The notes below the pieces were generated by a model that saw only the letters and a program-made list of their open reading frames with translations, did no database searches and was not told where the DNA came from. Of a DNA stretch of 64,000 nt, positions 3,486 through 62,314 are shown in pieces (positions within the stretch are counted from its first letter, which is position 1; each line of letters opens with the position of its first letter). The stretch is from Macrostomum lignano (lineage: Eukaryota): assembly GCA_002269645.1 (NCBI GenBank), contig NIVC01001149.1, forward strand, positions 1-64,000, read 5' to 3'. Position numbers and translations under genes: made by a program.

Positions 3486-5873
3486 TTAATGCAAAGGATT
3501 AGTCAAGTCAGTCACGTTGAAACTTTTTCTGGCAATAGATGCAAGCAAAGGTGTCATAGCTGCCAGCTCAGCAGTCTTCCTCTTTAAAACTAATTGCATA
3601 ATTCGCTCTAACTCTTCTTCATTCCTTTTCCAAATATGATCCTTCGCCTTTCGAAGCTCTTCAAGCTCATTTTCGTGCATCTCTGCTTTCTACTAAGCTT
3701 CTTTAAGCAACAGAAGTGCAACACTCTTCTTTTTTTCCCTAATTTCCATTGCATTTGAAACATCCATTTGCAAAGAGCTGAATTGCTTGCTAGCTTTCTT
3801 TTTGCCTCCACTTTAGTGAGCACCCTTTCGTTAGCTTTTTATAGCGCTCTCACTTTGCTTCTGCTGCCTTATCCTTCAGTCTCTGTCAGTATGCCAAATG
3901 AGCACTTGCGCACATGTTCAGAGAGCTAAGGTGACGGGCAGATTTGCAGCAGTCTATTTCTTTATAGACAAACAGGAACAAGTGACAATTAACTTAAGGC
4001 CTTGACAGTGAAGGGTGCCGAACTCATTGCTTCTTAGTAACTGTGTCCCAAACCATAAACCAGACTCAAGACTCACTCAAATTCAGCATTCCCATGTGGG
4101 AGAATAAGAAGTGCTTTGACAAATCTGATAGAGGATGATTACTAGCCTTAGATACAGACTCCCAAAGCTCAATAACATTTGACAACTCTAACTCTAGAAT
4201 CTCTATCTGGTGTAGACATACCTCAACTTCCACATTGCCAATCTCCATGTCAGTGAAAGCAAATTACATTTCGCCGCAAGGGTTGTAACCCACTTAACAT
4301 ACAATAAATTACACTGCTCCTTCAGATCCAGCATTTTCAGGCCTTGACGAACTTACTCTTGAAGGGCAAGTAGTCCCTTAGTTTTTCAGTTCCAACTTGG
4401 AAGAATTTTTTCATTGCTTGAAGACACACTTGCTAGTCGTTAGCACTCATGTCAACAAACAATCCTTTGCTGGCTCACCCATCCTAATGCTATAGGGCCC
4501 TAGCCAGACAGCTGGATCATCCAAGTTGACTTTCCATGGATGCCACTTGGAAAGCTTGGCCAAATCTACAAATTGCATCAGCTAGCACTTTATCAAGTCT
4601 AGCATTTGAATGTGTAGGATGTGGAGCTAGGAGCTTTCCTGCTGGAAAAGAAGCTCAAAATGCTAAAGTGGCTGCAAAACCTTGACTAAGAAGCAAAGAA
4701 AGAACTCAGTCTTTGGATCTCTTAGGGCCTTTTTATGGTACCAGTGTGCAGCCCTGAGTCCCTACTCTTGATGTTCAGTTCCAAAAAAAACTTATCAATT
4801 GGTGCATATAGATAGAGCACTTGTTCAAGGATAGGCAGCACTTAGAGCCACCAGGTGTCCACAGGTCTGAGGAATGCGAGCTTCTTTATCTCACAGAAGC
4901 TGTCAGCTAGAATGTCATCAAAACCATCCAATTGCACTATCTTAAAGAAGGCGTAGATCTCCTTAAGCAAGTGTTCTATTGACATTCCAAGGTCTGAAGA
5001 ACCATAGGCATATCTAGCCACGTTAGTGATATGGTGTAAGGAACAGCCTCCTAGATTGATTATGTTAGGAAACCCATTGGTTTTTAGCCTAACAACTGTA
5101 CCACTCTTGACACCACACATAGCATTATAACTGTCACTCATAATAGAGAGACAGTTGTTGCTATTGATTCTACACTCCAACATTGACTGATGGATGGAAG
5201 TCGCCATTGCCTCTGCTGTTGTAGACTTTAACTTACACAAGTCAATGCAGACCACTTTAACGTCAAAAGACAAGCTGGGCAGGAAGCGGGCAACTACTCC
5301 AAGGTATTTGGATCCTTTATTAGCCTCATTGATTTGGAGCGAGAACCATTTAGCTGTGCGGATCTCTTGCAGCACTACTTCTCTGATGTATAGAAACAAT
5401 GCATCCTAAAAGAGATAAGCAATCTTGCTTTCATGGAGCTGCATACAGGGAGGAATCTTTGAATCTCGACAAATCGCAGCAATATTCTCAGTGAGATCTT
5501 CTGATTCGAAGCTGCGTGCCTTGATTACAAGTCTTGTAACACATCGGATCTCAGCTGCCCATGTATCAGCAATTGTACTGCTTGTGTCTAATGTAGTTGA
5601 AGCAACTATATTGCCTGAGCTGGCTTCAGCAGCGCCTTCAACATCAGTTTGGGTTTGAGTCACCACCGGCAGTGGAGCGCAGTTCTTTCTACTGGACAAA
5701 ATCTTTTTATGTTTGCCAGCCTCTGCGTGGCTTCTAAAGTTGGTCAGGCCACTTTTTATTTCAAAAGTTTTGGCACCAGTTGCAGCGCACTGTGCTACTC
5801 TCGCTGTTGAGCTTCTTTGCCCAGATACCAATCTTTTTGCCATTGTTATCAGTGCACTCCAGCCAGTCTTCAT
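3486..5873 (-). pseudogene. Decayed hAT-superfamily DNA transposase (N-terminal Zn finger, catalytic core, dimerisation domain)
   Basis: The 5406-5873 ORF has a zinc-finger-like C..FEIKSGLTNFRSHAEAGKHK. The 4842-5399 ORF has FSLQINEA..KYLGVVARF and IMSDSYNAMCG..GGCSLHH. Further minus-strand frames give VLPILEQVLYLY, LRDPKTEFFLCFL and a dimerisation-like ALLILPHGNAEFE near 4080-4120. Multiple stops and frameshifts. Confidence 0.85.
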
Positions 5874-10400: not shown

Positions 10401-10608
10401 CCTGCATATGTTTTGTTGGCGCTCAGATTTCCTATGAAATGTGATAAGTTTGTGTCCACAAATTGCTACACACTGCTCAAAATATCATGAGTTGGGTGAG
10501 ATGTACACCCGGACCCCCGGACACTGTTCGGACACTTGTGCAATGCAACCTCATTACTTCCAGTCTGCATCAGCGCCAGACGAAGAAGCGGGTCCAACTT
10601 CGTCGTCA

Positions 10609-24368
<13,760 letters not shown>

Positions 24369-26136: not shown

Positions 26137-28019
26137 CTCCCATCAGCATCGCCAGCTCCCCCACCCGCCGTGGCCGTCGCTGGCCTCAGTGCCAGCGAGC
26201 CCGCAGAGCCTGACGAGCCGGACTTTGTCAGCGCCCTGCCGGACAGGCTGAAGTGCCCCATCTGCCTCGGACACTTGAAGTCGCCGCTGCAGACCTGCTG
26301 CGGTCACCGCTTCTGCCGAGGCTGCTTCTTCTCTGCAGCCGCGGCCGCCGCTGCCTCCACCACCACCTCCGGGGCAGCCTCAACAGTCCAGCAGGCGCCC
26401 CAGCTGCACCATCAGCACCTGCACCTTCATCACCACCAGCAGCATCATCAGTTCCAGCAGCCTCTGCCAGCTTCGGCAGCCGCAGCAGCAGCAGCTGCCG
26501 CCGCCGCAAGCCCGGCCTCTGTCAGCGCCCGCCGCGCCTGCCCGCTGTGCCGCTCGCCGATTCTCGACGTCGGGCCGTCGGCTGCTGGCCGCGGCGGCCT
26601 GACCGCTGGCGTGTTCAACGATCTGGCCACGGAGCGCGAGGTCCAGCAGCTGACGGTCCGATGCCCGCGCACCGGCTGCGGCGCCGCCATGGAGCTGGGC
26701 GGCCTGAGATCGCACCTGGCTACTGCCTGCCAGTTCGTGGAGGAGCTCTGCCCCGAGCAGTGCCAGGTGAGCAACCATAATTTTGCACATGCAAGCACCC
26801 AGTGTGAAACAGCACCCAATGTACACCCGGCACCCAATGTACACCTGGCATCCAATGTACACCCGGCACCCAATGTACACCCGGCACCCAATGTTCACCC
26901 GGCAACCAATGTACACCCGGCACCCAATGTTCACCCGGCAACCAATGTACACCCGGCACCCAATGTTCACCCGGCAACCAATGTACACCCGGCACCCAAT
27001 GTTCACCTGGCATCCAATGTACACCCGACACCCAATGTACACCCGGCACCCAATGTACATCCGGCACCCAATGTACACCCAGCACCCAATGTACACCCGG
27101 CACCCAATGTACACCCGGCAACTAATGTACACCCGGCACCCAATGTTCACCTGGCACCCAATGTACACCCGACACCCAATGTACACCCGGCACCCAATGT
27201 ACACCCGGCACCCAATGTACACCCAGCACCGAATGTACACCCGGAACCCAATGTACACCCAGCACCCAATGTACACCAGGCACCCAATGTACACCCAGCA
27301 CCCAATGTACTCCCAGCATCCAGTGTACACAGCACCCAATGTACACCCGGCACCCAATGTACACCCAGCACCCAATGTACCCCCAGCATCCAGTGTACAC
27401 AGAACCCAATGTACACCCACCGATCATCCCGCAGTCCCACATTCGCCGCTGCGACCTGGCCGCCCACCGAGCGGCATGCCGGGAGCGCCAGGTGGCCTGC
27501 GTGTTCTGCTCCGCCTCGGTGCCCTACCGGCAGCTGAACTTTCACTACCTGTTCGGCTGCTCCAATTTCCCCATGCCGTGTCCGCACCGCTGCGGCCGGG
27601 TGCTGGCCGGCCATCAGCGCCTGCACGAGCACGTGGACCGCGCGTGCCCGCTCACCCTGGTGCTCTGCCCCTTCGCCAGCTTCGGCTGTCCGGCTGCCAA
27701 TCGGCACAGGCGCGATCTCGGCCGCCACGTGGCCGAGGCTCACAGCTACCATCTGCAGTTGCTATGGCAACAGCAGCAGCATCCTCATCAGCAGCAGCAG
27801 CAGCAGCAGCAGCAGAGAGCCACCACAGCTGATCTGAACTGCATGCTGGACAAGCTGGTGGTGAACCTGCAGCAGCCGATGCAGTCACAGCAGCAGCAGA
27901 TGTACGCTGCTCAGCAACAACAGCAGCAAGCGGCTGCTCTGAGGAATCTTCTGCACCAACAACAACAGCAGCAGCAGCAACAGCAGCAGTACCAGCAGTA
28001 CCAACCCGCTTGGCGTTAA
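26137..28019 (+). CDS. TRAF-family-like protein (RING + TRAF-type zinc fingers + poly-Gln tail); 5' exon not located
   Basis: Exons 26137-26766 and 27435-28019 (phase 0, GTGAGC donor, CAG acceptor). RING PDFVSALPDRLKCPICLGHLKSPLQTCCGHRFCRGC...CPLC, then DLATEREVQQLTVRCPRTGC, then zf-TRAF CPHRCG and CPLTLVLCPFASFGC..RRDLGRHV..HLQLL, as in TRAF4/6. There is no ATG at the start of the first exon found. Confidence 0.85.
26810..27420. repeat. 18 bp minisatellite (TRAF intron)
   Basis: Unit CACCCAATGTACACCCGG; produces spurious APNVHP ORFs. Confidence 0.95.
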
Positions 28020-34274: not shown

Positions 34275-36111
34275 ATGTATATAATCATGGATGTTTAATG
34301 CGCATTAAACTACCGTGATCTTATATGAAATCCGAATTGCTTTTTTGTAGCTTTCTCTTGAGCCGGGCCGAATGCGGTGCAGTCAGTCGGTAAAGCCCCG
34401 ACTGGGGGTGTCGGGGCGAAGCCCCGACTGGGGGTGTGGGGGCAAAGCCCCCACATTGGAACCATAGACAAATTTTCCATAAATTTAAGACAGTACTAGC
34501 TAGACGAAATCCGAATTACTTCTTTCGTAGCTTTCTCTTGAACCACACCGCGATGGAAGAAGAATTTGATAGCGACAACTTTTTTTAATTATTTCGATCC
34601 AGCCCCTGCTGGAAATGTAGTTCCGCCGCCCCTCGGAAACGCTAAAACACTGCCGACCAAACCTAGCTCTCGTTTCGGTGAGTTGCTTGATGAGACCGCT
34701 TTGGAGCGCAGAATGCTAGAGAGCTCACCTGAGTCTACACTAGCAAGAGAAAAGTGGGCGATGAATGTGTTCCGGACGTGGAAGGATCGAATCGTGTCCA
34801 ACTGCAAATGCAAGGCCGTCTGTCAGGACTCGCGGTGATTAAGCCTGTCGAAGAGCTTACAAAGAATGAGATCAACGAACTGTTGCAATTCTTCGTTTTT
34901 GAGGTGAGGAAGGAGAATGGCGAAAAATATCCGCCGGGAACTCTGAAAAACTTGGTGTCGATGATCCAACACTTTTACGTGTATACAATGAAGCGCCAGA
35001 TGTCCATCTGGACGGACGCAGAATTTGCTAGCTCGCGACAGGCCTTGGACGCGGCAATGCGTGAGACTGCTAAAGCCGGGAACCTGAATGGCTCTCAAAC
35101 TGCAGCACCGATTCCTGCCACAGAGGAAGCCACTCTCTGGGAGCGAGGATTTCTTGGAGACAGCACACCAAAGACGCTCGTTTTTACAGTGATATTTTTA
35201 ATTGGTAAAGTGTTTGGACTTCGTGGAGGACGCGAACTTTATCTCCTAGAGTATAACAAACAAATCCAACTGGCGACCGAGGGAGAAGACGAGATTCTGA
35301 CGTATGCCGAAACCACGGTGTCCAAAACACGACCGTGTGGCTTAAGACCTTCAATCGGCCTATCAAGTGTAACACGGTGTATCATACACCAGGACACAAT
35401 CGCTGTCTTGTTTGCTTTTACAAGCGCTACGTCAGCCTCCGCCCGACCGAATGCACAAAGCCGCAACTATTTTTGGTCTGGTACCGGAATCCTGCATCTA
35501 TTCAAGCTGGGAAGTGGTATCAGAATCAGTTACTAGGACGCCACACTATCGATTCAGTTGTGCGCAGCGTCACGGTGAGCCTGCCGGAGCCAACAAGTGG
35601 GAAGTACAGCAATCAGTCGCTCAGGAAGACTTGCGCCACAACGCTGCGTGACGAGGGCATGTCCAGGCCCGAAATCGCGAAAATTACTGGACACAGTTCA
35701 GCTGCCATAGAACGCTATATCGCTCCGTCTGCAAAGGTGGCCAGATTCGCTTCTAATGTTTTACAGGGTGCGTCTCCTGCAGCCGAAACTAATCCAGGCA
35801 TGCATGTAAGTGAGCCTGTCGCTTCTGGAGATTCCAGCGCTTCTATTACTGACCACGGTGTCAAGTCTATCATCATTGATGGAGCTAAAATCGAAATTCA
35901 GTTTAAGTGAGTTTGTGAAACGTTTAATGCACTGAAGAAAACGTAATATGTTTCCTATATAATCCTACCAATTGTCTATGCTTTGGCTAGAAAATTGTTT
36001 TTTTGTTGCTTCGTTATACAGTAATATAACTCGCTCGCCTCGAGACCATCAACTGCAGCCTTGGACTTTCTAACCCTAGAATGCGCATTAAACATCCATG
36101 ATTATATACAT
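34275..36111 (+). mobile_element. Crypton-type tyrosine-recombinase DNA transposon, 1837 bp
   Basis: Perfect 32-bp terminal inverted repeats (34275-34306 / 36080-36111, ATGTATATAATCATGGATGTTTAATGCGCATT) enclose a DUF3504/YR-like coding region. Confidence 0.88.
34553..35910 (+). CDS. Crypton tyrosine recombinase (three single-base frameshifts)
   Basis: MEEEFDSDN.. SRFGELL..KWAMNVFRTW, LLQFFVFEVRKENGEKYPPGTL, FGLRGGRE (catalytic R), RCLVCFYKRYVSLRP, WYQNQLLGRHTI, YSNQSLRKTCAT, ITGHSS..IERY. Indels at ~34583, ~34790 and ~35343. Confidence 0.85.
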
Positions 36112-44370: not shown

Positions 44371-46457
44371 GTGCGGCAAGCATATCCTCATTGCATTAAG
44401 AGAGAAGAGTTGCACAGCATTTTTCGCTATGCTAGATGATATTGCTCAAGAGCTATTCACAGCGTCTCTTGCACCACTGCCTTGAGTCCTGCCTTTGGCT
44501 CTAGGCAATGGGCGCTCAGTTTTTTTAAATATCCAGCGTCTCTACGCGCTGCACTCTGCATCTCTCTTTGACGCACAGCTTTTGTTTTGTTGCTCATCCG
44601 AGCACCCCTCTGTGCACCTGCCTCAGTGCAAAACTGCTACTTATAGGAAGGTCGAGCAGTTGCTCGTTTCATTTGTCCTTCTTTTGGCTCATAAATAACT
44701 GCTTTGTTGAACAGTCTTTTCGCATTTCGTAGCAAAACTCGTAGATCTCTTTTTTATTTAAGGTGCGAGCGTGAGCAGTCCTGCTCACACGGCTCTCTGC
44801 GCCTGTTACATTTGCACGCATATCAATCAACAGAATTCAACTCTGGCTTTGATCTATTGACCAGATGTTCCGCCTTTATTCGTATATTTTAGTCTCGTCT
44901 CCCCGTATATATCACAGGCATATTCATGAACGTCTGATCGCGTACCTGCACCTGTAGTTGCCAACTGCATATCAAGGAGTCACCAGGCAAACACTAATCC
45001 GATGTTTTGGGATGCGCCGTCTTTTTGGCGGCGATAAAACTCAAAATAAATACTGATTTATTCTTTGGAAAACTTTGGGTATAATTTTAAAATTGAGAAA
45101 CAAAAATCACAAAGCACATCAATCAGGTTGCTGCATCAGCTTTAAAATTTAACACAATCACACATGCATTAGGAGCTTGTATACTTAAGCTCGTAATTTC
45201 ATTTTTTGTTAGTATTTTACTTTAAAAGTAAAAAATCCAGAAACTAAAGATAACGGTAAAGTAGTAAGGTTATGCAGATCAACTTGAGCATAGAGTGCGC
45301 TTGAGCTGAAGGGGCCAACACAGCAGTCAGATAAACAAAAACTGTGAGCACTGAGACGCAAAGAAGGAACAAAATATAAATAAAAAAATCAGAGCAGCGC
45401 GTACGGATATCGGTTTTATCTTTGAACAGTTAGAAATCTCAGATAAAAATTTAGAAAGCTGTTTGCCTCACAAAACAAATTAATTTAAACCATCAGAGCG
45501 GTCTTATCAGTTTAATCAGACTGGCCATCAGTCTGATCTGGTTAGGCAGAGCAGAGTAACGAAATTGGTCCCAACTATGGGTGATTCAATTCGCGTCATC
45601 ATAAGGCCCTAAGCTTAGGCTGGTGAGGAGAGAGCGGAGAGTCATGGCTAGAGTTGGATTAAACCTGCCTCTCAGTTCTCGTGAACTGTGGTTCAATGTT
45701 GCTGCGAAGTATAAGTATCTCAGGAACCGCTAAACAATTTCATTGAACAGCCCCTAACCTTTTGGAGCTCTTTCTGGATCAAAGCTAACAAGGCGTGAAA
45801 GCTGGTCGACTCTCTGCGGCACAACATGGTACAGGCTTTTATTCACCTGAACTTTGGCTTCCTGCAAGTAGCCGCTCACCTTGGTCATGATGGTACTGAG
45901 GTCCAGGTCACGAAAGTTCTCCTCAATGAAATTGCAAACAGTCTGCACGTACAGCGAACCCGTTTCGACATTTCTAAAGGCGACTGAGCCTGGAGTGTTG
46001 GCGTAGCAGACCAGAAAGTCGCCCTCTGCCGGACGGACTGCGGTGTTGTACACCGGAGCGGTGGAGTCCGTTTCCTCGCGAGAATTGGGAGCAGCAACTG
46101 GTTCGACGCGGCTTCCGCGACAGGCCTGGATGAAGAACACCTTCGGCTTTCCTCCAAGTCTGCGGCAGACGGAGGTCTGTGATGCGATGGCAGTGGCGGT
46201 AAAGTCGTCCGAATTAGAAGCTAAATACAGTCTCGTCAATACTTTGGTGAATGCGAAAAACAAGTTCTTTTTCATTCAAGTTGGGAATTTGGTTCCATTT
46301 TGTACGAGCGTACATTATTACACTGTAAATTTTTCATATCCCTGTTCTTTCGTATATTTAGATAAAAAATATGAAACGATAATATTGGCTAGTTAGGCTC
46401 ACCTGGAACCTGTCTGTCAGCTTTTGAATTTCGCAGGGCACGCCGTCTTTACCGTAG
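44371..46457 (-). other. Copy A of a diverged segmental duplication (copy B = 47301-49751)
   Basis: Both copies start GTGCGGCAAGCATATCCT and share blocks through to ACCGTAG inside caspase exon 8. Confidence 0.88.
45754..46457 (-). CDS. Partial caspase duplicate: 3' fragment of exon 8 (46403-46457) plus a complete last exon (45754-46176) with QACRG and the small subunit
   Basis: YGKDGVPCEIQKLTDRFQ|TSVCRRLGGKPKVFFIQACRG..EETDS..GDFLVCYANTPGSVAFRN..GSLYVQT..VPQRVDQLSRLVSF. The His-Gly region is absent, with an in-frame TGA just upstream of the fragment. Confidence 0.85.
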
Positions 46458-49049: not shown

Positions 49050-50051
49050 CTAAGCATTCCGAGCTCTTTCTGGATAGAAGCTAACAAGGCTTGAAAGCTG
49101 GTCAACTTTCTGCGGAACAACGTGATACAGGCCGCCTTTCACCTGAACCGGGTTTTTGTGCAAGTGGCCGCTCACCTTGGTCATGATGGTAATCAGGTCG
49201 AGCTCACGGAAGTACTTCTCGATGAACTCGCAAACAGTCTGCACGTACCGCGAGCCCGAGTCGATGTTTCTAAAAGCGGCTGAGCCTGGAGTGGTGGCGT
49301 AGCAGAGCAGAAAATCGCCCTCTGCAGGGCGGATTGCGGAGTTGAACACCGGAGCGCCTGCCTCATCCGTTTGCTCACGAGAGCTCCGAGCAACAGCTTG
49401 GTCGCGACCGCTGCCGCGACAGGCCTGGATGAAGAACACCTTCGGCTTTCCTTCAAGGCTGCCGCAGACAGAGCTCTGTGATGCGATGGTAGTGGCGGTG
49501 AAGTCTTTGGTATTAGAAACTACTAACAGCTTTGTCTATACTTTTGCAGAGACGAAAAACAGGCTAAACATTACTCTCGTTTCAATATCATTGGTTTCTA
49601 CTCTTAGGAATTCTTCGAAACTTTTATATCCCTGTTCTTGCTCATATATGCTCATAAAATAATAAACATGGTATTGTTAGCTATAGTTAGGCTCACCTTG
49701 AACTTTTCCGTCAGGTTTCGAATTTCGCAGGGCACGCCGTTCTTACCGTAGATGCAGTCGTGGCTGCCGTGCGCCATCAGGAAGCAGACAAAGCTGCCGT
49801 GATTGGCAAGGTCCGGTGATCTTTTGATCTCGTTGAGGAAATCGTCCACCTCCTCAGCAGTGAGGTCCTCTTTTATTCTGACGATGAAGCGCAGCCTCTC
49901 GAAAACCTGTTTCACTCGTTCAACATCACGATCCGAACCTTTACGCTCTTTGTGACTGAATGTGATGTCACTTCCGGACTCGTACTTGCTGATGTTGATG
50001 ATCAGGCAGTAGCCTTGCGGGTCCGTCGCTGGATAGAAATCTCCCTCCACC
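49050..50051 (-). CDS. Caspase (peptidase C14A) catalytic domain, exons 8-9 of the ANK-caspase gene
   Basis: Catalytic His (AHG, codon 49769-71) and Cys (QACRG, codon 49419-21). The join FK|SSVCGSLEGKPKVFFIQACRG aligns without gaps to the canonical [23 protein letters not shown]. Confidence 0.95.
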
Positions 50052-53000
50052 CTGAAATGCAACAGACGCTCAATATGGTTTCATACTTTGACAGCACAAA
50101 ACTATTTATGTATGAGCACCTTGACAATTGACGACAAACTACTTTGTCGCCCATGGCTCCTTTCGGGTTTCTAAAAGTATTTTAATTGATATACGAATAA
50201 ATTCAATTTCACTGTCGAGTGACAAAATATGTGTAAGAAGTTTGCATTATAAATAGAAATGTTGACTCACACATCTGTTTCATCATCAATTGGTTCCTCG
50301 TCATAGGCATGTTCCGTGACAACTTTTTGCCTGAAATTGTAAAAAAAAGATTTGTACTCGTAGTTTCTCAGTTGTATGCTCTGCTGCTGTGTGTGCTGTA
50401 GCTGTGTGCTGTAGCTGTGTGTGTGCTGTAGCTGTGTGTGCTGTAGCTGTGTGCTGTAGCTGTGTGTGTGCTGTAGCTGTGTGTGCTGTAGCTGTGTGCT
50501 GTAGCTGTTTGCTGTAGCTGTGTGCGCTGTAGCTGTCTGCTGTAGCTGTGTGTGTGCTGTAGCTGTGTGTGCTGTAGCTGTGTGCTGTAGCTGTTTGCTG
50601 TAGCTGTGTGTGCTGTAGCTGTTTGCTGTAGCTGTGTGTGTGCTGTAGCTGTGTGCGCTGTAGCTGTCTGCTGTAGCTGTGTGTGTGCTGTAGCTGTGTG
50701 TGCTGTAGCTGTGTGCTGTAGCTGTTTGCTGTAGCTGTGTGCGCTGTAGCTGTCTGCTGTAGCTGTGTGCTGTAGCTGTGTGCTGTAGCTGTGTGTGCTG
50801 TAGCTGTGTGTGCTGTAGCTGTGTGCTGTAGCTGTGTGCTGTAGCTGTGTGTGCTGTAGCTGTGTGCTGTAGCTGTGTGCTGTAGCTGTGTGCTGTAGCT
50901 GTGTGCTGTAGCTGTGTGTGTGCTGTAGCTTTGTGCAGTAGCTGTGTGCTGTAGCTGTGTGTGCTGTAGCTGTGTGCTGTAGCTGTGTGTGCTGTAGCTG
51001 TGTGTGCTGTAGCTGTGTGTGCTGTAGCTGTGTGCTGTAGCTGTGTGTGCTGTAGCTGTGTGTGCTGTAGCTGTGTGCTGTAGCTGTGTGTGCTGTAGCT
51101 GTGTGCTGTAGCTGTGTGTACCAAAAAAACTCACGGCAGTTCCAGAAGCTCGTTAAAGTAAATCTTGCCGTCGTACCTAAATAGGCAGTGCGGAGTCTGA
51201 AGTCAGATGAATTTAGGTGAGAGCCCATGCTCTGTGCTTAATTCTGCTTTAAATAACAAATGTTTAGATTGACTACAAGATAAAGTCCATAATATTTTCT
51301 GTAATATTACAGAAAATCACAAAAAAACTCAACTGCCACAGCAAAACGCAATTGCTGGTGTCTCACAGCTCGCAGGCTGCTGAACATTAATATTCAACTG
51401 GCAATCTGCAGTCAAACTGCACTGCAAACTCCCTCAATGCAGCTTAGTCAGTGTCTGCTGCCCACTCAGAGAAACTGCAGTCAGCTGCTCACTATTCAAT
51501 CATAAATTACAGCATAATGTTTACTAAAGTCAGAGAGACATTCTCAGTCGCCATGGAAACTCACCCACGCAGCAGCTCAGCCAGTTTGCATTTTCCGTAC
51601 TTTGTGGCGAAATCCAGCGCAGTCCTGCCCTTAATGTCCTTCAGGCTCCAATCCGCCCCCGAGTCCAGCAGAACCCGACCGACTGCGGCGGCGGCGGCGG
51701 GGGGCGGCCAGCCGGCTGCCCGCACAAGGGGCGTGAATTCACAGCAATCACTGGCATTGGCGGAGGCTCCGGCAGCCAGCAGAGCGGAGGCTGCGGCAGA
51801 ATTGCCAGCGTAGGCTGCATGGTGGAGGCAATTGTTAGCCCAAATATCCGCACAGGTGGGGTCACCCAGCAGCACTAGCTGCTCCCAGTGAGTCTCATTA
51901 TCGCTCGAGCTGCTGAAAGATACCCTCATCAACGCGGTGCGACCCCATTTGTCAGGCAGGTCGCATCTGCCGCGGATTGCCGCTCGCCGCAGCCCTGCCG
52001 AGTCGCCCGCCTTGACCAGCCGCTGCAGTTCCTGTCGATCCGCCTCCTCCTGCAAAGGCGAGCGGGAAATTTGAGCACAGCTGCTCAGCTGCAGCCGCAT
52101 CGGCACCGCAGATGTCACTTACCTGAGCTGTCAGGCCGGAGATCCTGCCACGTGCATCCACAATTAGCCGCATCTCCCTGCAACAGCAATAATGAGCAGT
52201 AAATTTGTAATTGGCGATTGTTGAACTACGATCGTCATTATATAATTTAAGGCTGTACCTTACAATTTTTGTCATAAATAAAGTAAACAGTCAAAATTCC
52301 AAATTATCTGAGCTGCTCACAGATGGAGTTTCCAAGAGGACTGCAGCAGCTCTGCAACAATCAGCATCGGCGAGAGCGCATCCGACTTCTCACACGCAGC
52401 TCATTTTCCATTTCTGCAGCATGAGTTTCCTTCCATCTCATAATGTCTTACAAAGCATTCACACACAGCCTCCCAGTTCTCCATCTGCAGCTCAACCCAC
52501 ACACTCTCACTGCACACCGAGGCCCTACAGCTTCCATTCTCGACTGAGATCAACCGGCACCCCATTGGCTGGGAAGCAGGCAGCCAATCACAGCTCTCGC
52601 TTATCAAGCAGCAAACTGCTCACTCACCGCTTGATGTAGCTGGCCAGCTCTGAGTGGCCGCTGAGCCTCGCCAGTGCGGACGCCGTCCAATCTTCGAGAT
52701 CTTTCAGTCCGAGCAGCCGCGACCTCTTCAAGTTTCCGTGCTGTCTGCATTCATTGAACCTCTTCTGCCTGAGCAGGTGCAGCAGGTGCTTGGCGCATTT
52801 CCAGCTTCCAGTCCGCGCCGCCTCCATCAGCGGAGTGGCGCCGTTGTCGTTCCGCAGCCACTTCGCATCGAACGACAGCAGCGTCAGCAGCCGCAGGTGG
52901 TCTCGCCGGGCTGCCAGGTGCGCAGCCGTGTCGCCGTTCGCGTCAGCCGCCCTGGGGTTCGCGCCCAGCTCAAATAAGTACAAGATGCACTTTTCAGTGT

Positions 53001-53411
53001 GCACGGGAGTCTCCGGAGCGTCGGCCACCAGCATGAGGACGGTTCGACGAGCTGCATCAGCGCTGGTGACCAGCTGGCGCGTTGCCAGCCGCCGGATCTG
53101 TCCGAATTCACCTCGGATGACGTCGTGAGCGAGAGTCTGGAGATCGGCTGGTGAGTCTCCGACGCTTGTCCGGTTGCTGGGGTCCGGCTGAGTGAGTTCC
53201 TGCAACTGCAATTGAGACACCCAAGCTGCACATTCAAACATGTAAGTGAGTTCCTGCAACTGCAATTGAGACACCCAAGCTGCACATTCAAACATGTGAG
53301 TGAGTTCCTGCAAATGCAATCGAAGCCTACAATAAGTCATATGTTTCAATTTGCTTAACTAACTTTACTCACCTTTTCGTCAGGAAATGGTGTTGGCCTT
53401 CTCTCTGCCAT
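49050..53411 (-). CDS. Ankyrin-repeat-caspase fusion protein, 694 aa, 9 exons
   Basis: Exons 53411-53373, 53199-52628, 52177-52123, 52049-51565, 51176-51135, 50330-50271, 50170-50120, 50051-49697, 49475-49050. All introns are GT-AG, phases are consistent, and the total is 2085 nt with no internal stop. ANK motifs: GDTAAHLAA, GATPLMEAA, NNCLHHAA, GRTALDFA. Caspase motifs: GYCLIIN, RKGSDRD, FLMAHG, KPKVFFIQACRG, DFLLCYATTPG..FRN. Confidence 0.88.
50385..51118. repeat. 11-13 bp satellite (intron 5 of ANK-caspase)
   Basis: Unit TGCTGTAGCTG(TG); an inverted copy lies at 55425-55820. Confidence 0.95.
51565..52049 (-). CDS. Ankyrin repeat block 2 (exon 4 of ANK-caspase)
   Basis: DKWGRTALM, DIWANNCLHHAAYAG, DCCEFTPLVRAA, LLDSGADWSLKDIKGRTALDFA. 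Confidence 0.9.
52628..53199 (-). CDS. Ankyrin repeat block 1 (exon 2 of ANK-caspase)
   Basis: DAARRTVLMLV, LFELGANPRAADANGDTAAHLAARRDH, NDNGATPLMEAARTG, DLEDWTASALARLSGH. Confidence 0.9.
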
Positions 53412-54291: not shown

Positions 54292-55385
54292 ATGGCGACA
54301 AGTAGAAAAATTGAAGAGTTTGACGTGGCTAAACCGGATCAATGAAAGCCTACGAAGAGCGACTAGAGCAATTTATCGTCGTGAATGAAGTGACCGAGGC
54401 ACAAAAACGAACGAGCTTGATCACAGTGATAGGCAATGACTGTTATCAATTACTACGCAACCTGCTATCGCCTAAGAAGCCAAAGGATGTGGCGTACGAC
54501 GAACAAGTGAAGACGCTGAGGGAACACTTCAACCCGAAGCCTAAGATGTTTGTCGAGCGGTACAACTCCCACAGCAGAGTCCAACACAAAGGAGAAACAG
54601 TGAGTGACTTTGTTGCAAGTCTGCGGAGGTTGGAGGCCACGTGTGGTTTTGACAAGTTCCTGGAGGAGGCATGAGAGACAGGTTCGTCGTTGGCCTCAGG
54701 AACAGGCTCATCCAGCACCGATTGGTACAAGAAGAGACACTGACCCTGTCGGGTGCACTAACGCTAGCGACTGCGATGGAAGCAGCAGAGTGAGGAGTCG
54801 TGAGTCGAGTACTCACCTCGACCACAGGAGACGGTTATAGGGTCAATTTCTTGAAAGAAACTAACAAGCAATCAACTGCAGCGAACATTGGAAAAGCAGC
54901 CGCGCCCAAGATAGATGTTTCCGCTGTAACGCGAAGGATCATTGGGCAAGGAGCTGTCCGAGTGCGGCCGAGTAGGACACCTTAGAGATGCATGCCGTAC
55001 AAAGGACAAGGCAAAAGAGTCTGGAAGTGGCAGGTCAAAGTGATTCAACTCTTCAAAACGTGGGAAGTCCGGTAAGGTGCATTACGCACGGAATTTCGAC
55101 AGTAAGTCAGAAAGTGAGGGTTCGGACTGCAGTGGTCGAGACGAGCATTCCGAGATCAGGACTGTTTGCTACAGGAATGGCTGGCTTTAGTGGTTCAGCA
55201 CCGTATATGTGCGAGTTAAATATAAATGGGCATTTTGTAAACTCCCAACTTTGACAAGACCCTTATTAGCAAAAATACTGGCAAGAAAATTGGCCTAAGC
55301 TGGTCTAAATCTAATGTTAGACTGTCAAGCTACACAGATCATCTCATACCAGTTCTGGGCGAAACTGCTGCTACCTTAACTAACT
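54292..55385 (+). pseudogene. Ty3/Gypsy (Mag-like) gag and truncated protease, degenerate
   Basis: YEERLEQFIVVN..LITVIGNDCYQLLRNL..LREHFNPKP..ERY..RVQHKGETVSDFVASLRRLEATCGF..RDRFVVGL. Two CCHC knuckles (CFRCNAKDHWARSC; CGRVGHLRDAC). Protease start LNINGH..LSSYTDHLIPVLGE lacks the DTG motif. Stops, frameshifts, and truncation at a satellite. Confidence 0.88.
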
Positions 55386-55424
55386 AGCACACACAACTGC
55401 AGAACATACAATTAGATCACACAC

Positions 55425-55820
55425 AGCTACAGCACACAGCTACAGCACACAGCTACAGCACACAGCTACAGCACACAGCTACAGCACACACAGCTACAGC
55501 ACACACAGCTACAGCACAAAGCTACAGCACACACACAGCTACAGCAAACAGCTACAGCACACAGCTACAGCACACAGCTACAGCACACAGCTACAGCACA
55601 CAGCTACAGCACACAGCTACAGCACACAGCTACAGCACACAGCTACAGCACACAGCTACAGCACACAGCTACAGCACACAGCTACAGCACACACAGCTAC
55701 AGCACACACAGCTACAGCACAAAGCTACAGCACACACACAGCTACAGCAAACAGCTACAGCACACAGCTACAGCACACAGCTACAGCACACAGCTACAGC
55801 ACACACAGCTACAGCACACA
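55425..55820. repeat. 11-13 bp satellite, reverse complement of 50385-51118
   Basis: Unit CAGCTACAGCA(CA). Confidence 0.95.
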
Positions 55821-56524
55821 TCAACAGCACACAGGTTACAAAGGCTCGTAGAATGATTACAGCAGCTGATGGCAAATAGCAAAAAGCTTGAGTACCGTTT
55901 GGCATTTGAGCAGCTTCACTGCTTGAAGGTGGAAAGAGATTAAAACAGTGACAGGAAGAGAAAACAGAGGCGGTAACGACTGCGGTGCAGATAAACAAGT
56001 TTAAAAATGAGAAAAGTTCATTAGTGCATCTGTCACTCAGCGCAGGGGCATTGAAGCAGTCCCAGCCTGTGTGTGCAGCATATTCATAAACAGTTCTGGG
56101 ATAAATAGTGTGAGAATCAAGAGAACTCGAGACACGAAAGTTGCATAAATTTGGTCTGAAATTTGAGCGGGCTGTAAATGTTTTAAAACAATTCCAAATT
56201 GTATTCAGATTTGCCAGAAATTTTCACTGTGCAAGAAATCCTCAGTAATTGATTACAAGGCCTTGAAAATATTTCAACACGGTCTCTGAATGCGACATTT
56301 TAGAGATGGGAATTAGTTCTAAGTAAAATCAGCCAGTCACAGAAAGTTTAATAAAACTTCACCGTGTTATATAACTGCCTAAAGTACAAAACACCAAAAT
56401 AAAAGTGCATGCGCTGGTATCAAAACACTCGTTAAAATGGAAGAATCGAAACGCAAACTGAAGCATGCATATCATTATATGTAGGGATGAAATTAGGGAA
56501 GATTCAAAAAACAAGAATTGTAAG

Positions 56525-56737
56525 CTAGACTGCCATCGTCTGTGCGGATCGTCTCTCCCTGCGGTCTCTGGCGGTGCATCGGCTGTAGAAATACCTCAGC
56601 TCCGCGGGCACGCCATCCGGCAGGGCCGTGGCGCCCCTCCTGTCAAGATGCTGGAACAGCTCACATTAGCTTCTGGCATTGGCGATTCCGAGCAGCTCTG
56701 GCGCCATGATGTTCAGAGTGCCTTTTAGTGTCCTTGG
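56525..56737 (-). pseudogene. Protein kinase fragment (subdomains VIII and X-XI)
   Basis: Minus-strand translation PRTLKGTLNIMAPELLG, then a stop, then ELFQHLDRRGATALPDGVPAELRYFYSRCTARDRRERRSAQTM. Subdomain IX is missing. Confidence 0.65.
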
Positions 56738-57030
56738 GAGTTGCTGAGATGCCAATTAGCTCAATGGGAAGTTGCTGAGATGCCAATTAGCTCAATGGGA
56801 AGTTGCTGAGATGCCATGGCTCAATGGGGAGTCGCTGAGATTCCATGGCTCAATGGGGAGTCGCTGAGATGCCATGGCTCAATGGGGAGTCGCTGAGATT
56901 CCATGGCTCAATGGGGAGTCGCTGAGATGCCATGGCTCAATGGAGAGTCGCTGAGATTCCATGGCTCAATGGGGAGTCGCTGAGATGCCATGGCTCAATG
57001 GGGAGTCGCTGAGATGCCATGGCTCAGTAA
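56735..57030. repeat. 29 bp minisatellite (31185 family)
   Basis: Unit GGGGAGTCGCTGAGATGCCATGGCTCAAT. Confidence 0.93.
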
Positions 57031-60216: not shown

Positions 60217-61017
60217 TCAGCGGCGGACAAAGAAGTCGCCGCTGCTGGCGCTGCTGAGCGCGACCGGGACTGCAGCGAACTCCAGCAGGTGGCACAGGCG
60301 CTGCTGCTGGCTGAAGATCACCGCCTGGCAACCGGAGCGGCACCGGTACAGGCACTCGGGCAGCCCGGCACACTGCAATGTTCTGAAGGCGGGCGCATCC
60401 GGGACGCTCAGCTCAACGAAGGTCCGGTTGCCGGGGACGAACACGTTCCGGTCTGCAGATGTAGAATGGGGCCAGTTGCATTAATGCCAAGCCTTTCTAC
60501 ATCATAGAAAGCAAGCCTCTCTACGGCTCGTAAAGAGCAATTTGTACTTTAACCTACTTGTGCAAGCGGCTTCCGCACTGCCCGTGTAGCTCAGCCGGAG
60601 CACCCAGTTTTGGTAGCCGCCTCCGCAGTTCTGGCTCAGATTTCCACTGCAAGCATGGGTGCAGTCCGAGTCTGAAGCAGCGCCCTGCGACCCGTACGAG
60701 TTGCCGCAGAAGCACCAGTATCCGGCCTGCAGAGCAGCGAACTCAAAACTGCCCAGAGCGCAGACGCTGCCGCACAGCTCGTGAGTCATCATCCAGTAGC
60801 TGCCGACATATGCGCCACCGCCATCGTTTATCGACATCAAACTGGAGCTGCCAATTTGTGTGAGGCCGAGGTGCTTCATGTCACCGACGTCTCTCGCGCC
60901 ATTCGCGCCGTCAACGAAGCAGCCGAGGTCCGAGATCTGGAACTGACGGCAGAGAGCGGCGCAGATCAGGCAGCTCAGGATCTGAGCGCAGAAGCAGATC
61001 CTGTACAGAGCCGGCAT
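60217..61017 (-). CDS. Secreted WSC-domain + PAN/Apple-like protein, 231 aa, 2 exons
   Basis: Exons 61017-60558 and 60452-60217 (phase 1). Signal-like MPALYRICFCAQILSCLICAALC. WSC: LGCFVD..MTHELCGSVC..FAALQAGYWCFCGN..CTHACSGNLSQNCGG. C-terminal ECLYRCRSGCQAVIFSQQQRLCHLL is PAN/Apple-like. Confidence 0.85.
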
Positions 61018-62314
61018 GGTAGGCTGATTTACAGTGCGATTTTCAGAGAAAATTGGACTCTTAGAGTAGAGAATGGATTCATCAAAGCTATTTGAAGTGG
61101 CATTATAATTGCTAACACAGAGACAATGGGCTTTCAATACAGAACCCGCGACGGGTTTGCACAGCTGCGCTGATTGGAATCCGTGGGCTGCTGCCATTGC
61201 GTTAAATCCCACAGCTGCATCGTCTGTTTAATTTATTTTAACTGTAGCACTGAATTCCTAGGCTTTTCGAATACAGCTGCACGCGCTCAAGGCCACAACG
61301 TTCGCTCCGTTGCCCTGCCGCTGTTGGCCACTGCAGCAGTGACGCGGATCTGCACCGTCTTGGCCACTTGGACGTCGCGGCATTCACTTGCACAAGGTGC
61401 AATTAATTTAATTGCGCTAAAACAGCTAACAATGTCAAATTCATCACTTACTTGTCCTCAGTTGTGTTTAGTGAGCCCTGCAGATTCATGTAGGATCTGG
61501 CTGGTCCCCTTCGGGATGGCATCGAAGGCACCCAACTTGTTGCTGACTTGAATATAGCGGCATTTTCGCACCTGCTGCTCAAACAGCTGTCGGTTATTGC
61601 TGGCTGAGGGAGGGGTAGCTCTGCAATTCCGCTGTTGCTGCAACTGTGTCCGGCATGTCAGGTCGGGTGAGGCGGAAGCAGTAACGGATGCCATTCAGCA
61701 GCAATTCAGGGTCATGGATCGTCAGTCATCAGTTGTCAGACGGGCCTGCTGCGCTGTAGTTTGAGTACCCCAGCCGGGACGCAATTTAGTTTAATGACGT
61801 GCTGATTTAGCGCTGGTGCGCTCGTAGCAGGAGAAGCAGACATACCGGAACCTGCGGTCGCGCTAAATGCAGCCGTTGTGGTTGTTGGACTTCACGCCCC
61901 CAGCTGTCCCCCTTCCGTATCGTCGGCCCAATCTGAGCTTTGAGTTGGTCCACTGCAGGTTGCTGATTGCAGGTTTGCGTCGCTGATTAACTTGGACTTG
62001 GATTTTTTTATCATCAGTTGGTTAGTACAGTATTACACTCGTAATGCGCCGATAGCAATATTCGCTCGTAAATCCAATGGGATCAAGAGATTTACATCAG
62101 TGGACAGAATTTGATGGGTTTGTAACCTGGGTTTTGGCTTTAAAAGCATTTGCTATTCCTCTACATGTAAGAGTATTGATAATTGATTTCACCTGCCCTA
62201 ATAGACAGATGTGCAACCGACAGCTCAGCCGCAGCTATTGTGCGGTGCATCTGAAGGCCGCGTACGGCTGTTCGGGGTTGCCACACACACCCTCAATTAC
62301 TTCAGGTAGAGTTT

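What the first reader, a model, noticed from the sequence alone, without database searches (positions are those of the whole stretch)
49050..53411. Ankyrin-repeat caspase: ANK blocks in place of a CARD/DED prodomain
Seen: four apparently separate ORFs (two ankyrin, two caspase) join through five small exons into one 2085-nt, 694-aa frame, with every intron GT-AG and every phase matching. The caspase keeps its His-Gly and QACRG dyad, both Asp-pocket arginines (RKGSDRD, AFRN), and an acidic linker site (EQTD). Known: long-prodomain initiator caspases normally use CARD or DED domains for recruitment. Inference: the ~8 ankyrin repeats could be a non-death-fold sensor or recruitment module, implying a non-canonical caspase activation route. 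An acidic spacer (AYDEEPIDDETD) sits where prodomain cleavage would be expected.
Basis: partly seen in the sequence, partly recalled or inferred. Interest (0 to 1): 0.88.

Follow-up and report, generated by a model that had tools for sequence, protein, structure and literature searches.

The report
Flatworm caspase with ankyrin-repeat prodomain
This is a real nine-exon gene from a Macrostomum flatworm that encodes a seemingly active caspase carrying eight ankyrin repeats instead of a CARD or DED, a design already published for flatworms in 2024, though said there to be missing from free-living species.

Summary
Nine minus-strand exons (53411-49050) join in frame, all introns GT..AG, into a 694-aa protein. 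Using the exon-2 acceptor that the homologues use, 6 nt upstream, gives 696 aa. The protein has eight ankyrin repeats, a disordered acidic linker and a caspase domain with every catalytic and Asp-pocket residue.

All eight intron positions and phases match a transcript-derived Macrostomum lignano gene model (P0001). That match includes an unusual GTGCT donor. The one-gene reading is therefore well supported without RNA from this locus.

The novelty claim does not hold. "ANK caspases" were described in flatworms by Krasovec et al. 2024 (PMC11463336), who credit Lee et al. 2014 with the first one, in Schistosoma. M. lignano databases already hold at least 12 ANK+caspase protein clusters.

Three things are new:
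- This is a free-living flatworm, and that paper says free-living flatworms lack ANK caspases.
- The same ankyrin head also occurs on MAP3K-like kinases, on kinase+caspase fusions and alone, in interleaved tandem gene arrays.
- The only parasite ANK caspase I recovered is closer to a different M. lignano ANK caspase than to this one.

Function is unknown. Activation by ankyrin-mediated recruitment is an inference. Verdict: new member of a known kind, moderate interest.

The parts
53373..53411 (-). Coding exon 1 (ATG at 53411; MAERRPTPFPDEK)
   Evidence: The N-terminal peptide M..R.P.PFPDE[KR] recurs in paralogues P0006 and P0003. The donor is GTGAGT.
52628..53205 (-). Coding exon 2: first ankyrin block (repeats 1-4).
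   Evidence: It is 91% identical in protein to M. lignano P0008, P0007 and P0001. Homologue P0001 uses the upstream 'cag|TTGCAG' acceptor.
52123..52177 (-). Coding exon 3 (55 nt): helical connector between the two ankyrin blocks
   Evidence: 89% to P0010. The equivalent P0001 exon lies at L001 11279-11332.
51565..52049 (-). Coding exon 4: second ankyrin block (repeats 5-8). It is the most variable part of the protein.
   Evidence: It is at most 72% identical to any M. lignano protein. The mean across 35 homologues is 52%, against 64% for block 1. dN/dS against L001 is 0.82.
51135..51176 (-). Coding exon 5 (42 nt, YDGKIYFNELLELP): a linker exon shared with the ANK-kinase and ANK-only paralogues
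   Evidence: One search shows P0006 with ..RGYDGKIYFYEPLALP followed by the kinase, and P0003 ending ..YDGKNYFDEPQAMP. The equivalent exon lies at L001 14236-14277.
50331..51134 (-). Intron 5, carrying a 13-nt minisatellite (50386-51118) that is open in all three frames
   Evidence: Its translation (TATAHTATAH...) forms the false N-termini of database models P0067 and P0069.
50271..50330 (-). Coding exon 6 (60 nt): acidic linker (QKVVTEHAYDEEPIDDETD, candidate prodomain cleavage after Asp417)
   Evidence: The AlphaFold2 model is disordered over residues 397-438.
50120..50170 (-). Coding exon 7 (51 nt, NPKGAMGDKVVCRQLSR): a cassette-like linker exon with a weak GTGCTC donor
   Evidence: It is present with the same GTGCT donor in P0001 and is also present in P0002. 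It is skipped in models P0067, P0069 and P0077.
49697..50051 (-). Coding exon 8: caspase large-subunit (p20) core up to the catalytic His529, including Arg471
49050..49475 (-). Coding exon 9: QACRG (Cys572), intersubunit loop with REQTD|E (Asp590), small subunit (p10) with Arg622, and stop TAG at 49050
   Evidence: It is 95% identical to M. lignano P0067.
45612..46457 (-). Partial downstream duplicate of the gene's 3' end: tail of exon 8, intron 8, an intact exon 9' (46176-45754, with QACRG) and 3' flank
   Evidence: Exon identity is 81.5% against 65% for the intron. dN/dS between exon 9 and exon 9' is 0.56. The exon-8 donor could splice to exon 9' in frame.
56474..56752 (-). Decayed kinase C-lobe pseudo-exon upstream on the same strand, a relic of an ANK-kinase paralogue
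   Evidence: 41-48% identity to P0005, P0006, P0007, P0010 and P0011. One search shows an in-frame stop and an internal deletion.

Best explanation
The region is a single protein-coding gene of a Macrostomum flatworm (M. lignano or a close relative). It has nine coding exons on the minus strand and encodes a 694-696-aa 'ANK caspase'. The protein runs, N to C:
- Two blocks of four ankyrin repeats.
- A disordered acidic linker of about 45 residues, encoded by three in-phase micro-exons.
- A canonical caspase domain with the His529-Cys572 dyad and the Asp-binding Arg471, Gln570 and Arg622.

The gene belongs to a large, fast-evolving, tandemly arrayed Macrostomum family. In that family one ankyrin head is joined to different outputs: a caspase, a MAP3K/STE-like kinase, kinase plus caspase, or nothing.

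Proposed mechanism (inferred, not shown): the ankyrin head, especially its hypervariable second block, binds a partner or ligand. That binding brings zymogens together, or relieves autoinhibition. The caspase domains then dimerise and cut their own intersubunit loop after Asp590 (REQTD|E), and perhaps the linker after Asp417. The active protease then cleaves downstream substrates in a death or immune-type pathway. In this scheme the ankyrin repeats do the job that CARD or DED does in classical initiator caspases.
For: Gene structure:
- The spliced frame is intact, with GT..AG at every intron.
- All eight intron positions and phases, a rare GTGCT donor and the micro-exons match M. lignano gene model P0001 (BOX15_Mlig016858g2) in L001.
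- That annotation is built from RNA-seq and cuts transcripts at measured trans-splice and poly(A) sites (PMC5730564).
- The window and L001 are colinear at 77-89% DNA identity, introns included.

Domains and fold:
- Pfam finds Ank plus Peptidase_C14.
- The AlphaFold2 model has mean pLDDT 83. The ankyrin solenoid (30-390) and the caspase domain (445-690) are confident. The linker (397-438) and the intersubunit loop (576-604) are disordered.
- Foldseek matches caspase-3, -7 and -8 at target TM about 0.85, and DARPins for the ankyrin part.

Catalysis:
- The residue-by-residue match to caspase-3 has E 3e-38.
- The acidic P4-P1 motif in the loop recurs in paralogues that keep QACRG.
- The paralogue that lost the Cys (P0001 and P0020, QAGRG) has also lost that Asp.

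Family context:
- One search found 45 M. lignano clusters carrying this head: 12 with caspase, 18 with kinase, 14 ankyrin only, 1 with SH3.
- P0122 combines Ank, Pkinase and C14.
- L003 holds an interleaved tandem array of these genes.
- Block 2 is more variable than block 1.
- dN/dS is 0.45-0.82, and dS differs between exons, which indicates a mosaic history.

Nearest caspases outside Macrostomum are mostly DED (caspase-8-like) caspases: 53 of 145 nearest representatives.
Against: - There is no RNA evidence for this locus. Support for a single transcript comes from a homologue that is 70% identical.
- Other M. lignano models skip linker exons (P0068, P0020, P0070, P0077) or end after exon 5 (P0003). 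An ankyrin-only product or linker-less isoforms are therefore possible here too.
- High dN/dS and the neighbouring gene relics would also fit a recently duplicated copy drifting towards loss.
- No partner of the ankyrin head is known.
- By sequence against solved structures, the catalytic domain is closest to executioner caspases-3 and -7. An initiator role is not established.
- The prodomain site DDETD|V is poorly conserved.
Confidence: 0.72

Rival explanations
1. There are two products rather than one: an ankyrin-only protein (exons 1-5) and a separate short-prodomain caspase (exons 6/7-9). On this view the fusion is an annotation artefact.
For: - Database models exist for ankyrin-only proteins ending exactly at the exon-5 boundary (P0003..YDGKNYFDEPQAMP).
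- Database models also exist for caspase-only proteins (P0067, P0069, P0071).
- Retaining intron 5 gives an immediate stop ('..LELP*').
- Exon 7 contains an internal Met.
Against: - The 'caspase-only' models P0067 and P0069 have no start codon. They begin inside the translated intron-5 minisatellite (TATAH...), so they are truncated predictions.
- P0001 is cut at experimentally defined transcript ends and spans both halves with identical intron phases.
- P0068, P0020 and P0070 join ankyrin exon 4 directly to caspase exon 8.
- Introns 4 and 5 contain no AATAAA or ATTAAA.
- An ankyrin-only isoform could still exist alongside the fusion.
Confidence: 0.12
2. It is a young, redundant copy in a churning tandem family, either not expressed or on its way to becoming a pseudogene. 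Its architecture would then have no function of its own at this locus.
For: - The gene is flanked by family relics: a kinase pseudo-exon carrying a stop and a truncated caspase 3' copy.
- dN/dS is 0.45-0.82.
- The closest full-length homologue, P0001, has already lost the catalytic Cys.
- This exact protein is absent from the searched protein collection.
Against: - The frame stays open across nine exons and 2085 nt.
- All splice sites are intact.
- Every catalytic and S1-pocket residue is retained.
- dN/dS is below 1.
- Exon 9 is 95% identical to a M. lignano protein.
Confidence: 0.12
3. It acts as an executioner-type caspase. The ankyrin repeats would then serve as a substrate-targeting or localisation module, or as an autoinhibitory cap removed by an upstream protease. 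They would not be a recruitment domain for self-activation.
For: - The best matches among solved structures by sequence are caspase-3 and -7 (E about 3e-38).
- The intersubunit loop is short, as in caspase-3.
- An acidic, disordered linker with Asp sites lies between the ankyrin head and the protease.
Against: - In the exhaustive profile search, DED-bearing initiator caspases are the commonest type among the nearest non-Macrostomum relatives (53 of 145).
- The literature places flatworm ANK caspases next to DED caspases (PMC11463336).
- Foldseek does not separate caspase-3, -7 and -8.
Confidence: 0.2

Closest known systems
Platyhelminth 'ANK caspases' (Krasovec et al. 2024, Genome Biol Evol, PMC11463336; that paper credits Lee et al. 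2014, Trends Parasitol, with the first one, in Schistosoma)
   Same: Both have ankyrin repeats N-terminal to a p20/p10 caspase domain with no CARD or DED. Both are from flatworms. Both have caspase domains nearest to DED caspases. Both are uncharacterised functionally and proposed to be initiators.
   Different: - The paper states that the clade is restricted to parasitic flatworms and absent from free-living ones. This gene is from free-living Macrostomum.
- The one neodermatan ANK caspase I recovered (Cichlidogyrus, P0196) shares 31% identity (122 bits) in the caspase domain. Its ankyrin region shows no specific similarity to this one (E 0.075).
- P0196 is closer to another M. lignano ANK caspase, P0138 (37%, 195 bits). 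The two pair in an NJ tree with bootstrap 59%.
- A common origin of the two ankyrin prodomains is therefore not shown.
M. lignano hypothetical proteins BOX15_Mlig016858g2 (P0001) and BOX15_Mlig007583g1 (P0002), and UniProt A0A1I8GRA2 (P0067)
   Same: They have the same family, exon layout and linker. P0001 is 70% identical over 99% of the length, and P0067 is 90% identical over the caspase domain.
   Different: - P0001 reads QAGRG, so it has lost the catalytic Cys, and it has also lost the loop Asp. The window copy keeps both.
- P0002 is truncated within the p20 and its locus shows little upstream flank.
- P0067 is a truncated model.
- None is named or studied.
[quoted passage not shown]
   Same: It has the same ankyrin head family (E 2.9e-44 to the window head) and a C-terminal caspase. 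It falls in the same loose Macrostomum clade.
   Different: It carries a Pkinase domain between the ankyrin head and the caspase. The paper did not mention its ankyrin repeats. Identifying P0122 as the paper's sequence is my inference; the accession was not checked.
DED initiator caspases (caspase-8 and -10)
   Same: Both have a long prodomain. They are the commonest type among the nearest caspase domains outside Macrostomum (53 of 145). The presumed logic is the same: recruitment followed by self-cleavage.
   Different: This protein has no death-fold domain. Its prodomain is a repeat solenoid, so the FADD/DISC-type homotypic assembly cannot apply.
Zebrafish Caiap (a CARD + 16 ANK inflammasome adaptor, PMC5662874)
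   Same: Ankyrin repeats physically engage a caspase and stabilise its active complexes.
   Different: In Caiap the ankyrin repeats sit on a separate adaptor and act in trans. Here they are fused in cis to the protease. No homology between the two was tested.

Membership tests
Caspases (MEROPS C14A / Pfam Peptidase_C14) | Caspase fold with p20 and p10 parts | tested here: met
   Pfam PF00656 has E 6.5e-45 over residues 448-660. The AlphaFold2 model is confident over 445-690. Foldseek gives target TM about 0.85 to caspase-3, -7 and -8.
Caspases (MEROPS C14A / Pfam Peptidase_C14) | Catalytic His-Cys dyad with the QACxG pentapeptide | tested here: met
   His529 (AHG) and Cys572 (QACRG) align to caspase-3 His121 and Cys163.
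Caspases (MEROPS C14A / Pfam Peptidase_C14) | Asp-specific S1 pocket (two Arg and one Gln) | tested here: met
   Arg471, Gln570 and Arg622 align to caspase-3 Arg64, Gln161 and Arg207. The two Arg and the Gln are invariant across 11 Macrostomum paralogues.
Caspases (MEROPS C14A / Pfam Peptidase_C14) | Asp-directed proteolytic activity and self-processing | not testable with these tools
   This needs recombinant enzyme. The only support here is a candidate site, REQTD|E, in the disordered loop.
Platyhelminth ANK caspases (PMC11463336) | Ankyrin-repeat pro-domain in place of CARD or DED, on the same polypeptide | tested here: met
   Ank families cover residues 83-320 and no death-fold family is hit. 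The single spliced frame is conserved with transcript-derived P0001.
Platyhelminth ANK caspases (PMC11463336) | Platyhelminth origin | tested here: met
   All strong hits are Macrostomum lignano. The window is colinear with M. lignano contig NIVC01003438.1 at 77-89% DNA identity.
Platyhelminth ANK caspases (PMC11463336) | Membership of the single clade formed with the parasite (neodermatan) ANK caspases | tested here: inconclusive
   In an NJ tree of 104 caspase domains, the only neodermatan sequence available (P0196) pairs with M. lignano P0138 (bootstrap 59%). The window sits in a separate Macrostomum group: 100% with P0001 and P0069, under 30% deeper.
Platyhelminth ANK caspases (PMC11463336) | Restriction to parasitic species, as claimed in the paper | tested here: not met
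   Macrostomum is free-living, yet at least 12 M. lignano clusters carry Ank plus C14. This contradicts the stated distribution rather than the architecture.
Initiator (apical) caspases | Long prodomain that mediates recruitment and proximity-induced activation | tested here: inconclusive
   The prodomain is long, about 435 aa. Whether it mediates recruitment or activation cannot be tested here.
Executioner caspases-3/-7 | Short prodomain (about 20-30 aa) | tested here: not met
   About 435 residues precede the p20, even though caspase-3 and -7 are the best sequence matches among solved structures.

The most novel reading that the evidence does not exclude
The Macrostomum ankyrin head is a lineage-specific, diversifying sensor module. 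It is wired by exon shuffling within tandem arrays to alternative outputs: a caspase, an ASK1/STE-like kinase, both, or a decoy with no effector or a dead one. On this reading the family is a flatworm innate-immune or death-receptor system that activates a caspase directly through a repeat-solenoid sensor, without any death-fold adaptor. ANK caspases would then predate parasitism in flatworms, or have arisen at least twice.
Probability: 0.2. Interest if true: 0.7.

Novelty: new member of a known kind. Interest (0 to 1): 0.4.

Why it matters
How ankyrin-prodomain caspases are switched on is unknown. The 2024 paper that named them treats them as a parasite-specific invention and as possible drug targets. 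Finding an intact, apparently active member, and a whole family of them, in free-living Macrostomum changes two things.
- It corrects the reported distribution. It also raises the question of whether the design is ancestral to rhabditophoran flatworms or arose more than once.
- It places the question in an organism with published transgenesis (PMC5730564) and RNAi knockdown studies, where activation and partners of the ankyrin head can be tested directly.

The shared head on caspases and MAP3K-like kinases, arranged in interleaved tandem arrays, is a clear example of effector swapping by exon shuffling.

Tried and rejected
- **Word-index protein searches for parasite ANK caspases.** Three searches were run: the full-length protein, the caspase domain alone, and a profile of 11 Macrostomum caspase domains. 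None returned a Schistosoma or other parasite ANK caspase. In one search I set the cut-off at 1e-8, which may have hidden weak hits. Only the exhaustive HMMER search recovered one, the monogenean Cichlidogyrus (P0196, named).
- **Supplementary tables of PMC11463336.** They are not held, so I could not check which M. lignano accessions the authors used.
- **First tree attempt.** A Biopython NJ run with bootstraps timed out. I replaced it with a numpy NJ on 104 taxa and 200 bootstraps. This is a rough distance tree, not a maximum-likelihood or Bayesian analysis, and its deep nodes are unsupported.
- **Exact look-up of the 696-aa model in public assemblies.** I cannot say whether the window is M. 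lignano itself or a sister species.
- **Poly(A) signal scan.** It is uninformative. No AATAAA or ATTAAA occurs in introns 4 and 5, but none occurs in the 3' flank either.
- **Caspase-only models as evidence for two genes.** Rejected, because P0067 and P0069 begin in translated minisatellite sequence.
- **The stop codon right after exon 5 as a designed ankyrin-only switch.** Rejected as meaningless. Any intron that follows the second base of a codon and starts GTGAGT or GTAAGT gives an immediate stop when retained.


Full report

On the minus strand, nine exons join into 2085 nt and 694 aa. They are 53411-53373, 53199-52628, 52177-52123, 52049-51565, 51176-51135, 50330-50271, 50170-50120, 50051-49697 and 49475-49050. 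There is a single terminal stop. Every intron starts GT and ends AG, and every phase matches.

Pfam finds the caspase domain (Peptidase_C14, residues 448-660, E 6.5e-45). It also finds five ankyrin families across residues 83-320, and no CARD, DED or Death domain.

The window is eukaryotic. It has 47% G+C, many intronic minisatellites and transposon fragments. All strong protein hits are from the free-living flatworm Macrostomum lignano.

**2. One gene or two?**

The best full-length hit is P0001 (BOX15_Mlig016858g2, 731 aa). It is 70% identical over 99% of the query and carries both domain types.

I fetched its locus (L001) and mapped the protein back exon by exon. It has nine coding exons, with intron positions and phases identical to the window model. 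The shared features include:
- the 42-nt exon 5;
- exon 6, which is 60 nt in the window;
- the 51-nt exon 7 with its unusual GTGCT donor;
- the 'atcacag' acceptor of the last exon.

The two loci are colinear at 77-89% DNA identity, introns included.

The BOX15 annotation is not an ab initio prediction. It derives from RNA-seq assembled with StringTie and TACO. A pipeline then cuts transcriptional units at experimentally observed trans-splice and poly(A) sites (PMC5730564). A transcript joining the ankyrin and caspase exons therefore exists for the homologue.

The apparent counter-evidence is three 'caspase-only' M. lignano models (P0067, P0069, P0071). It dissolves on inspection. P0067 and P0069 have no initiator Met, and they begin with 'ATTQLQHT' and 'AHTATAHTATAH', which are translations of the intron-5 minisatellite.

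Other models join ankyrin exon 4 straight to caspase exon 8 ('AELLRG|VEGDFYP': P0070, P0020, P0068). P0077 joins exon 2 to exon 5 to exon 6 to exon 8. This is possible because exons 5, 6 and 7 are 42, 60 and 51 nt and all sit in the same phase. They behave as cassette exons that vary the linker length.

One refinement follows from the homologues. They begin exon 2 at the upstream member of a tandem 'ttgcag ttgcag' acceptor. The window equivalent is 53205, which adds Leu-Gln and gives 696 aa.

No RNA data exist for this locus itself, so I put the single-gene reading at about 0.85, not at certainty.

**3. What the protein looks like**

An AlphaFold2 model built on a 33-sequence alignment has mean pLDDT 83.
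- Residues 30-390 form a confident helical-repeat solenoid: two blocks of four ankyrin repeats joined by a helical connector.
- Residues 397-438 are disordered. This stretch corresponds to the end of exon 5 plus exons 6 and 7, and it is acidic.
- Residues 445-690 form a confident caspase fold.
- The intersubunit loop (576-604) is disordered.

Foldseek matches the C-terminal half to caspase-3, -7 and -8 (target TM about 0.85) and the N-terminal half to DARPins.

By sequence, the best solved relatives are caspase-3 and -7 (E about 3e-38). The alignment places Arg471, His529, Gln570, Cys572 and Arg622 on caspase-3 Arg64, His121, Gln161, Cys163 and Arg207.

The loop motif REQTD|E (Asp590) aligns with caspase-3 IETD|S. 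Related acidic motifs occur in paralogues that keep QACRG: REQTD, REETD, ETID and VSTD. The paralogue that has lost the catalytic Cys (P0001 and P0020, QAGRG) has also lost this Asp (REESR). That co-loss is indirect support for self-processing at this site.

The prodomain site DDETD|V (Asp417) lies in a region that is acidic in all paralogues, but the site itself is not well conserved.

**4. What is already known**

The architecture is published. Krasovec et al. [quoted passage not shown] They name these proteins ANK caspases and place them as sister to DED caspases. They credit the first example to Schistosoma (Lee et al. 2014) and suggest the proteins are initiators with an unknown activator.

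[quoted passage not shown] They also note one annelid ANK caspase.

No functional study turned up in the searches I ran.

**5. What this locus adds**

(a) *ANK caspases occur in a free-living flatworm.* Public M. lignano protein sets contain at least 12 clusters with Ank plus Peptidase_C14 related to this gene. They also contain two further, divergent ANK-caspase types:
- P0138 (BOX15_Mlig019067, named 'Caspase-8');
- P0158 (BOX15_Mlig001045).

The protein that fits the 'kinase-prodomain caspase' of the paper is P0122. It carries the same ankyrin head in front of the kinase: Ank, then Pkinase, then C14.

(b) *The relationship to the parasite ANK caspases is unresolved.* An exhaustive profile search of 1.84 billion representatives returned 145 proteins not already seen in the earlier searches. 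DED occurs in 53 of them and ankyrin repeats in 7. Of the seven:
- five are M. lignano;
- one is a jellyfish model;
- one is the monogenean Cichlidogyrus casuarinus (P0196).

The window protein matches P0196 at 31% identity (122 bits) in the caspase domain. The ankyrin regions show no specific similarity (E 0.075). M. lignano P0138 matches P0196 better, at 37% and 195 bits.

In a rough NJ tree, P0138 and P0196 pair with bootstrap 59%. The window groups with P0001 and P0069 at 100%, inside a weakly supported Macrostomum-only cluster.

So the window type may be a second, Macrostomum-specific ANK-caspase lineage. The P0138 type may be the counterpart of the parasite enzymes. A proper phylogeny is needed.

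(c) *The ankyrin head is a shared module.* Of 45 M. lignano clusters with this head, 12 carry a caspase, 18 a protein kinase, 14 nothing else and one an SH3 domain.
- The kinase is nearest to MAP3K5/ASK1, MAP3K2, PAK and TNIK, all in the STE group.
- The ANK-kinase proteins share exon 5 (YDGKIYF..LP) and diverge immediately after it.
- The window's head is closer to ANK-kinase paralogues (P0007 and P0008: 91% in block 1, 72% in block 2) than to ANK-caspase P0001 (90.5% and 56%).
- Synonymous divergence from L001 differs several-fold between exons: 0.076 in exon 2, 0.30 in exon 4 and 0.47 in exon 9. This indicates a mosaic history of recombination or gene conversion.
- A 60-kb M. lignano locus (L003) shows the substrate for this. 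On one strand it carries caspase exons, a complete ANK-caspase gene, extra copies of ankyrin exon 2, and two ANK-kinase genes.
- P0001 and P0002 lie on the same contig.

The window has the same signature in decayed form:
- a kinase C-lobe pseudo-exon with an in-frame stop lies upstream (56752-56474);
- a truncated 3' copy of the caspase lies downstream (46457-45612).

Ankyrin block 2 is the most variable region: mean 52% identity against 64% for block 1, lower in 28 of 35 homologues. dN/dS is high throughout, at 0.45-0.82.

**6. Most likely mechanism**

Shown:
- a single conserved reading frame;
- an ankyrin solenoid;
- a flexible acidic linker of variable length;
- a complete caspase active site;
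- a loop Asp site that co-varies with the catalytic Cys.

Inferred:
- the ankyrin head binds a partner, and the variable block 2 is the likeliest recognition surface;
- binding brings zymogens together or relieves autoinhibition;
- the protease dimerises and cuts after Asp590, and possibly after Asp417, which would release it from the head.

The family's features resemble immune or conflict-type receptor families. These features are lineage-specific expansion, tandem arrays, effector swapping, catalytically dead members and fast evolution. I rate that reading at about 0.2.

The rivals are set out in their own sections: separate ankyrin-only and caspase products, a decaying redundant copy, and an executioner with a targeting or inhibitory cap.

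**7. Verdict**

I classify this as a new member of a known kind. It has a useful twist on distribution and modularity, and it sits in a genetically tractable flatworm. Interest is 0.40.

Noticed in passing
window 45612-46457 (-); exon 9' at 46176-45754: A partial duplicate of the gene's 3' end lies about 2.9 kb downstream of its stop codon. It holds the last ~45 nt of exon 8 with its donor, intron 8, a full open exon 9' (QACRG, REETD loop, p10, own stop) and the 3' flank. Exons are 81-85% identical and the intron and flank 62-65%. dN/dS is 0.56. It could be a relic or an alternative terminal exon, because the exon-8 donor would join it in frame.
   Followed up: partly
window 56474-56752 (-): A decayed protein-kinase C-lobe exon, 41-48% identical to the M. 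lignano ANK-kinase paralogues, lies upstream of the gene on the same strand. It has an in-frame stop and an internal deletion. No ankyrin exons lie upstream of it, so it is a family relic.
   Followed up: yes
window 50386-51118 and 55420-55834: The same 13-nt minisatellite (CACACAGCTACAG) fills intron 5 of the gene and recurs about 4.3 kb away in inverted orientation, upstream of the gene. The intronic copy is open in all three frames. Its translation has been absorbed into public M. lignano protein models (the N-termini of P0067 and P0069).
   Followed up: partly
window 53191-53320: A 54-nt tandem duplication (2.4 copies, 97% identical) spans the exon-2 acceptor. It creates repeated in-frame 'ttgcagttgcag|GAACTCACT' acceptors.
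   Followed up: partly
L001 (M. lignano NIVC01003438.1), P0001; also P0020: The closest full-length homologue reads QAGRG instead of QACRG, and it has lost the intersubunit-loop Asp. Two independent annotations show this. It is therefore a likely catalytically dead pseudo-caspase paralogue.
   Followed up: partly
L003 1-60151 (M. lignano NIVC01000754.1): This locus holds a tandem array on one strand: caspase exons, a complete ANK-caspase gene (5.2-9.7 kb), two extra copies of ankyrin exon 2, and two ANK-kinase genes (37-40 kb and 48-51.7 kb). The annotated 404-aa 'ankyrin-only' gene P0003 is drawn across 40 kb of this array.
   Followed up: partly
M. lignano proteins P0122, P0147, P0088: M. 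lignano has other unusual caspase architectures. P0122 is Ank + Pkinase + caspase (three near-identical gene copies). P0147 is Pkinase + caspase-like + Ank + caspase, which may be a merged model. P0088 is Ras/Roc + caspase.
   Followed up: partly
window 26170-28019 (+): A TRAF-like gene (RING finger plus TRAF-type zinc finger) lies about 21 kb from the caspase gene. An 18-nt minisatellite (26812-27418) lies within its long ORFs. No link to the caspase gene was tested.
   Followed up: no
window 10441-24368 (+): A long multi-exon gene encodes a Glu/Gln/Ala-rich coiled-coil protein. Nearly every intron carries a different minisatellite. It was not identified.
   Followed up: no
window 34754-35910 (+), 54342-54674 (+), 4842-5873 (-): These are mobile-element remnants. 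The first pair of ORFs has DUF3504/QRICH1 and a weak phage-integrase match, so it looks Crypton-like. The second is a PNMA/gag-like ORF about 1 kb upstream of the caspase gene's ATG. The third is a pair of ORFs with no Pfam hit for the one ORF scanned (4842-5396).
   Followed up: partly
window 60502-61212 (-): An ORF with a WSC (carbohydrate-binding) domain, Pfam E 9.7e-14.
   Followed up: no
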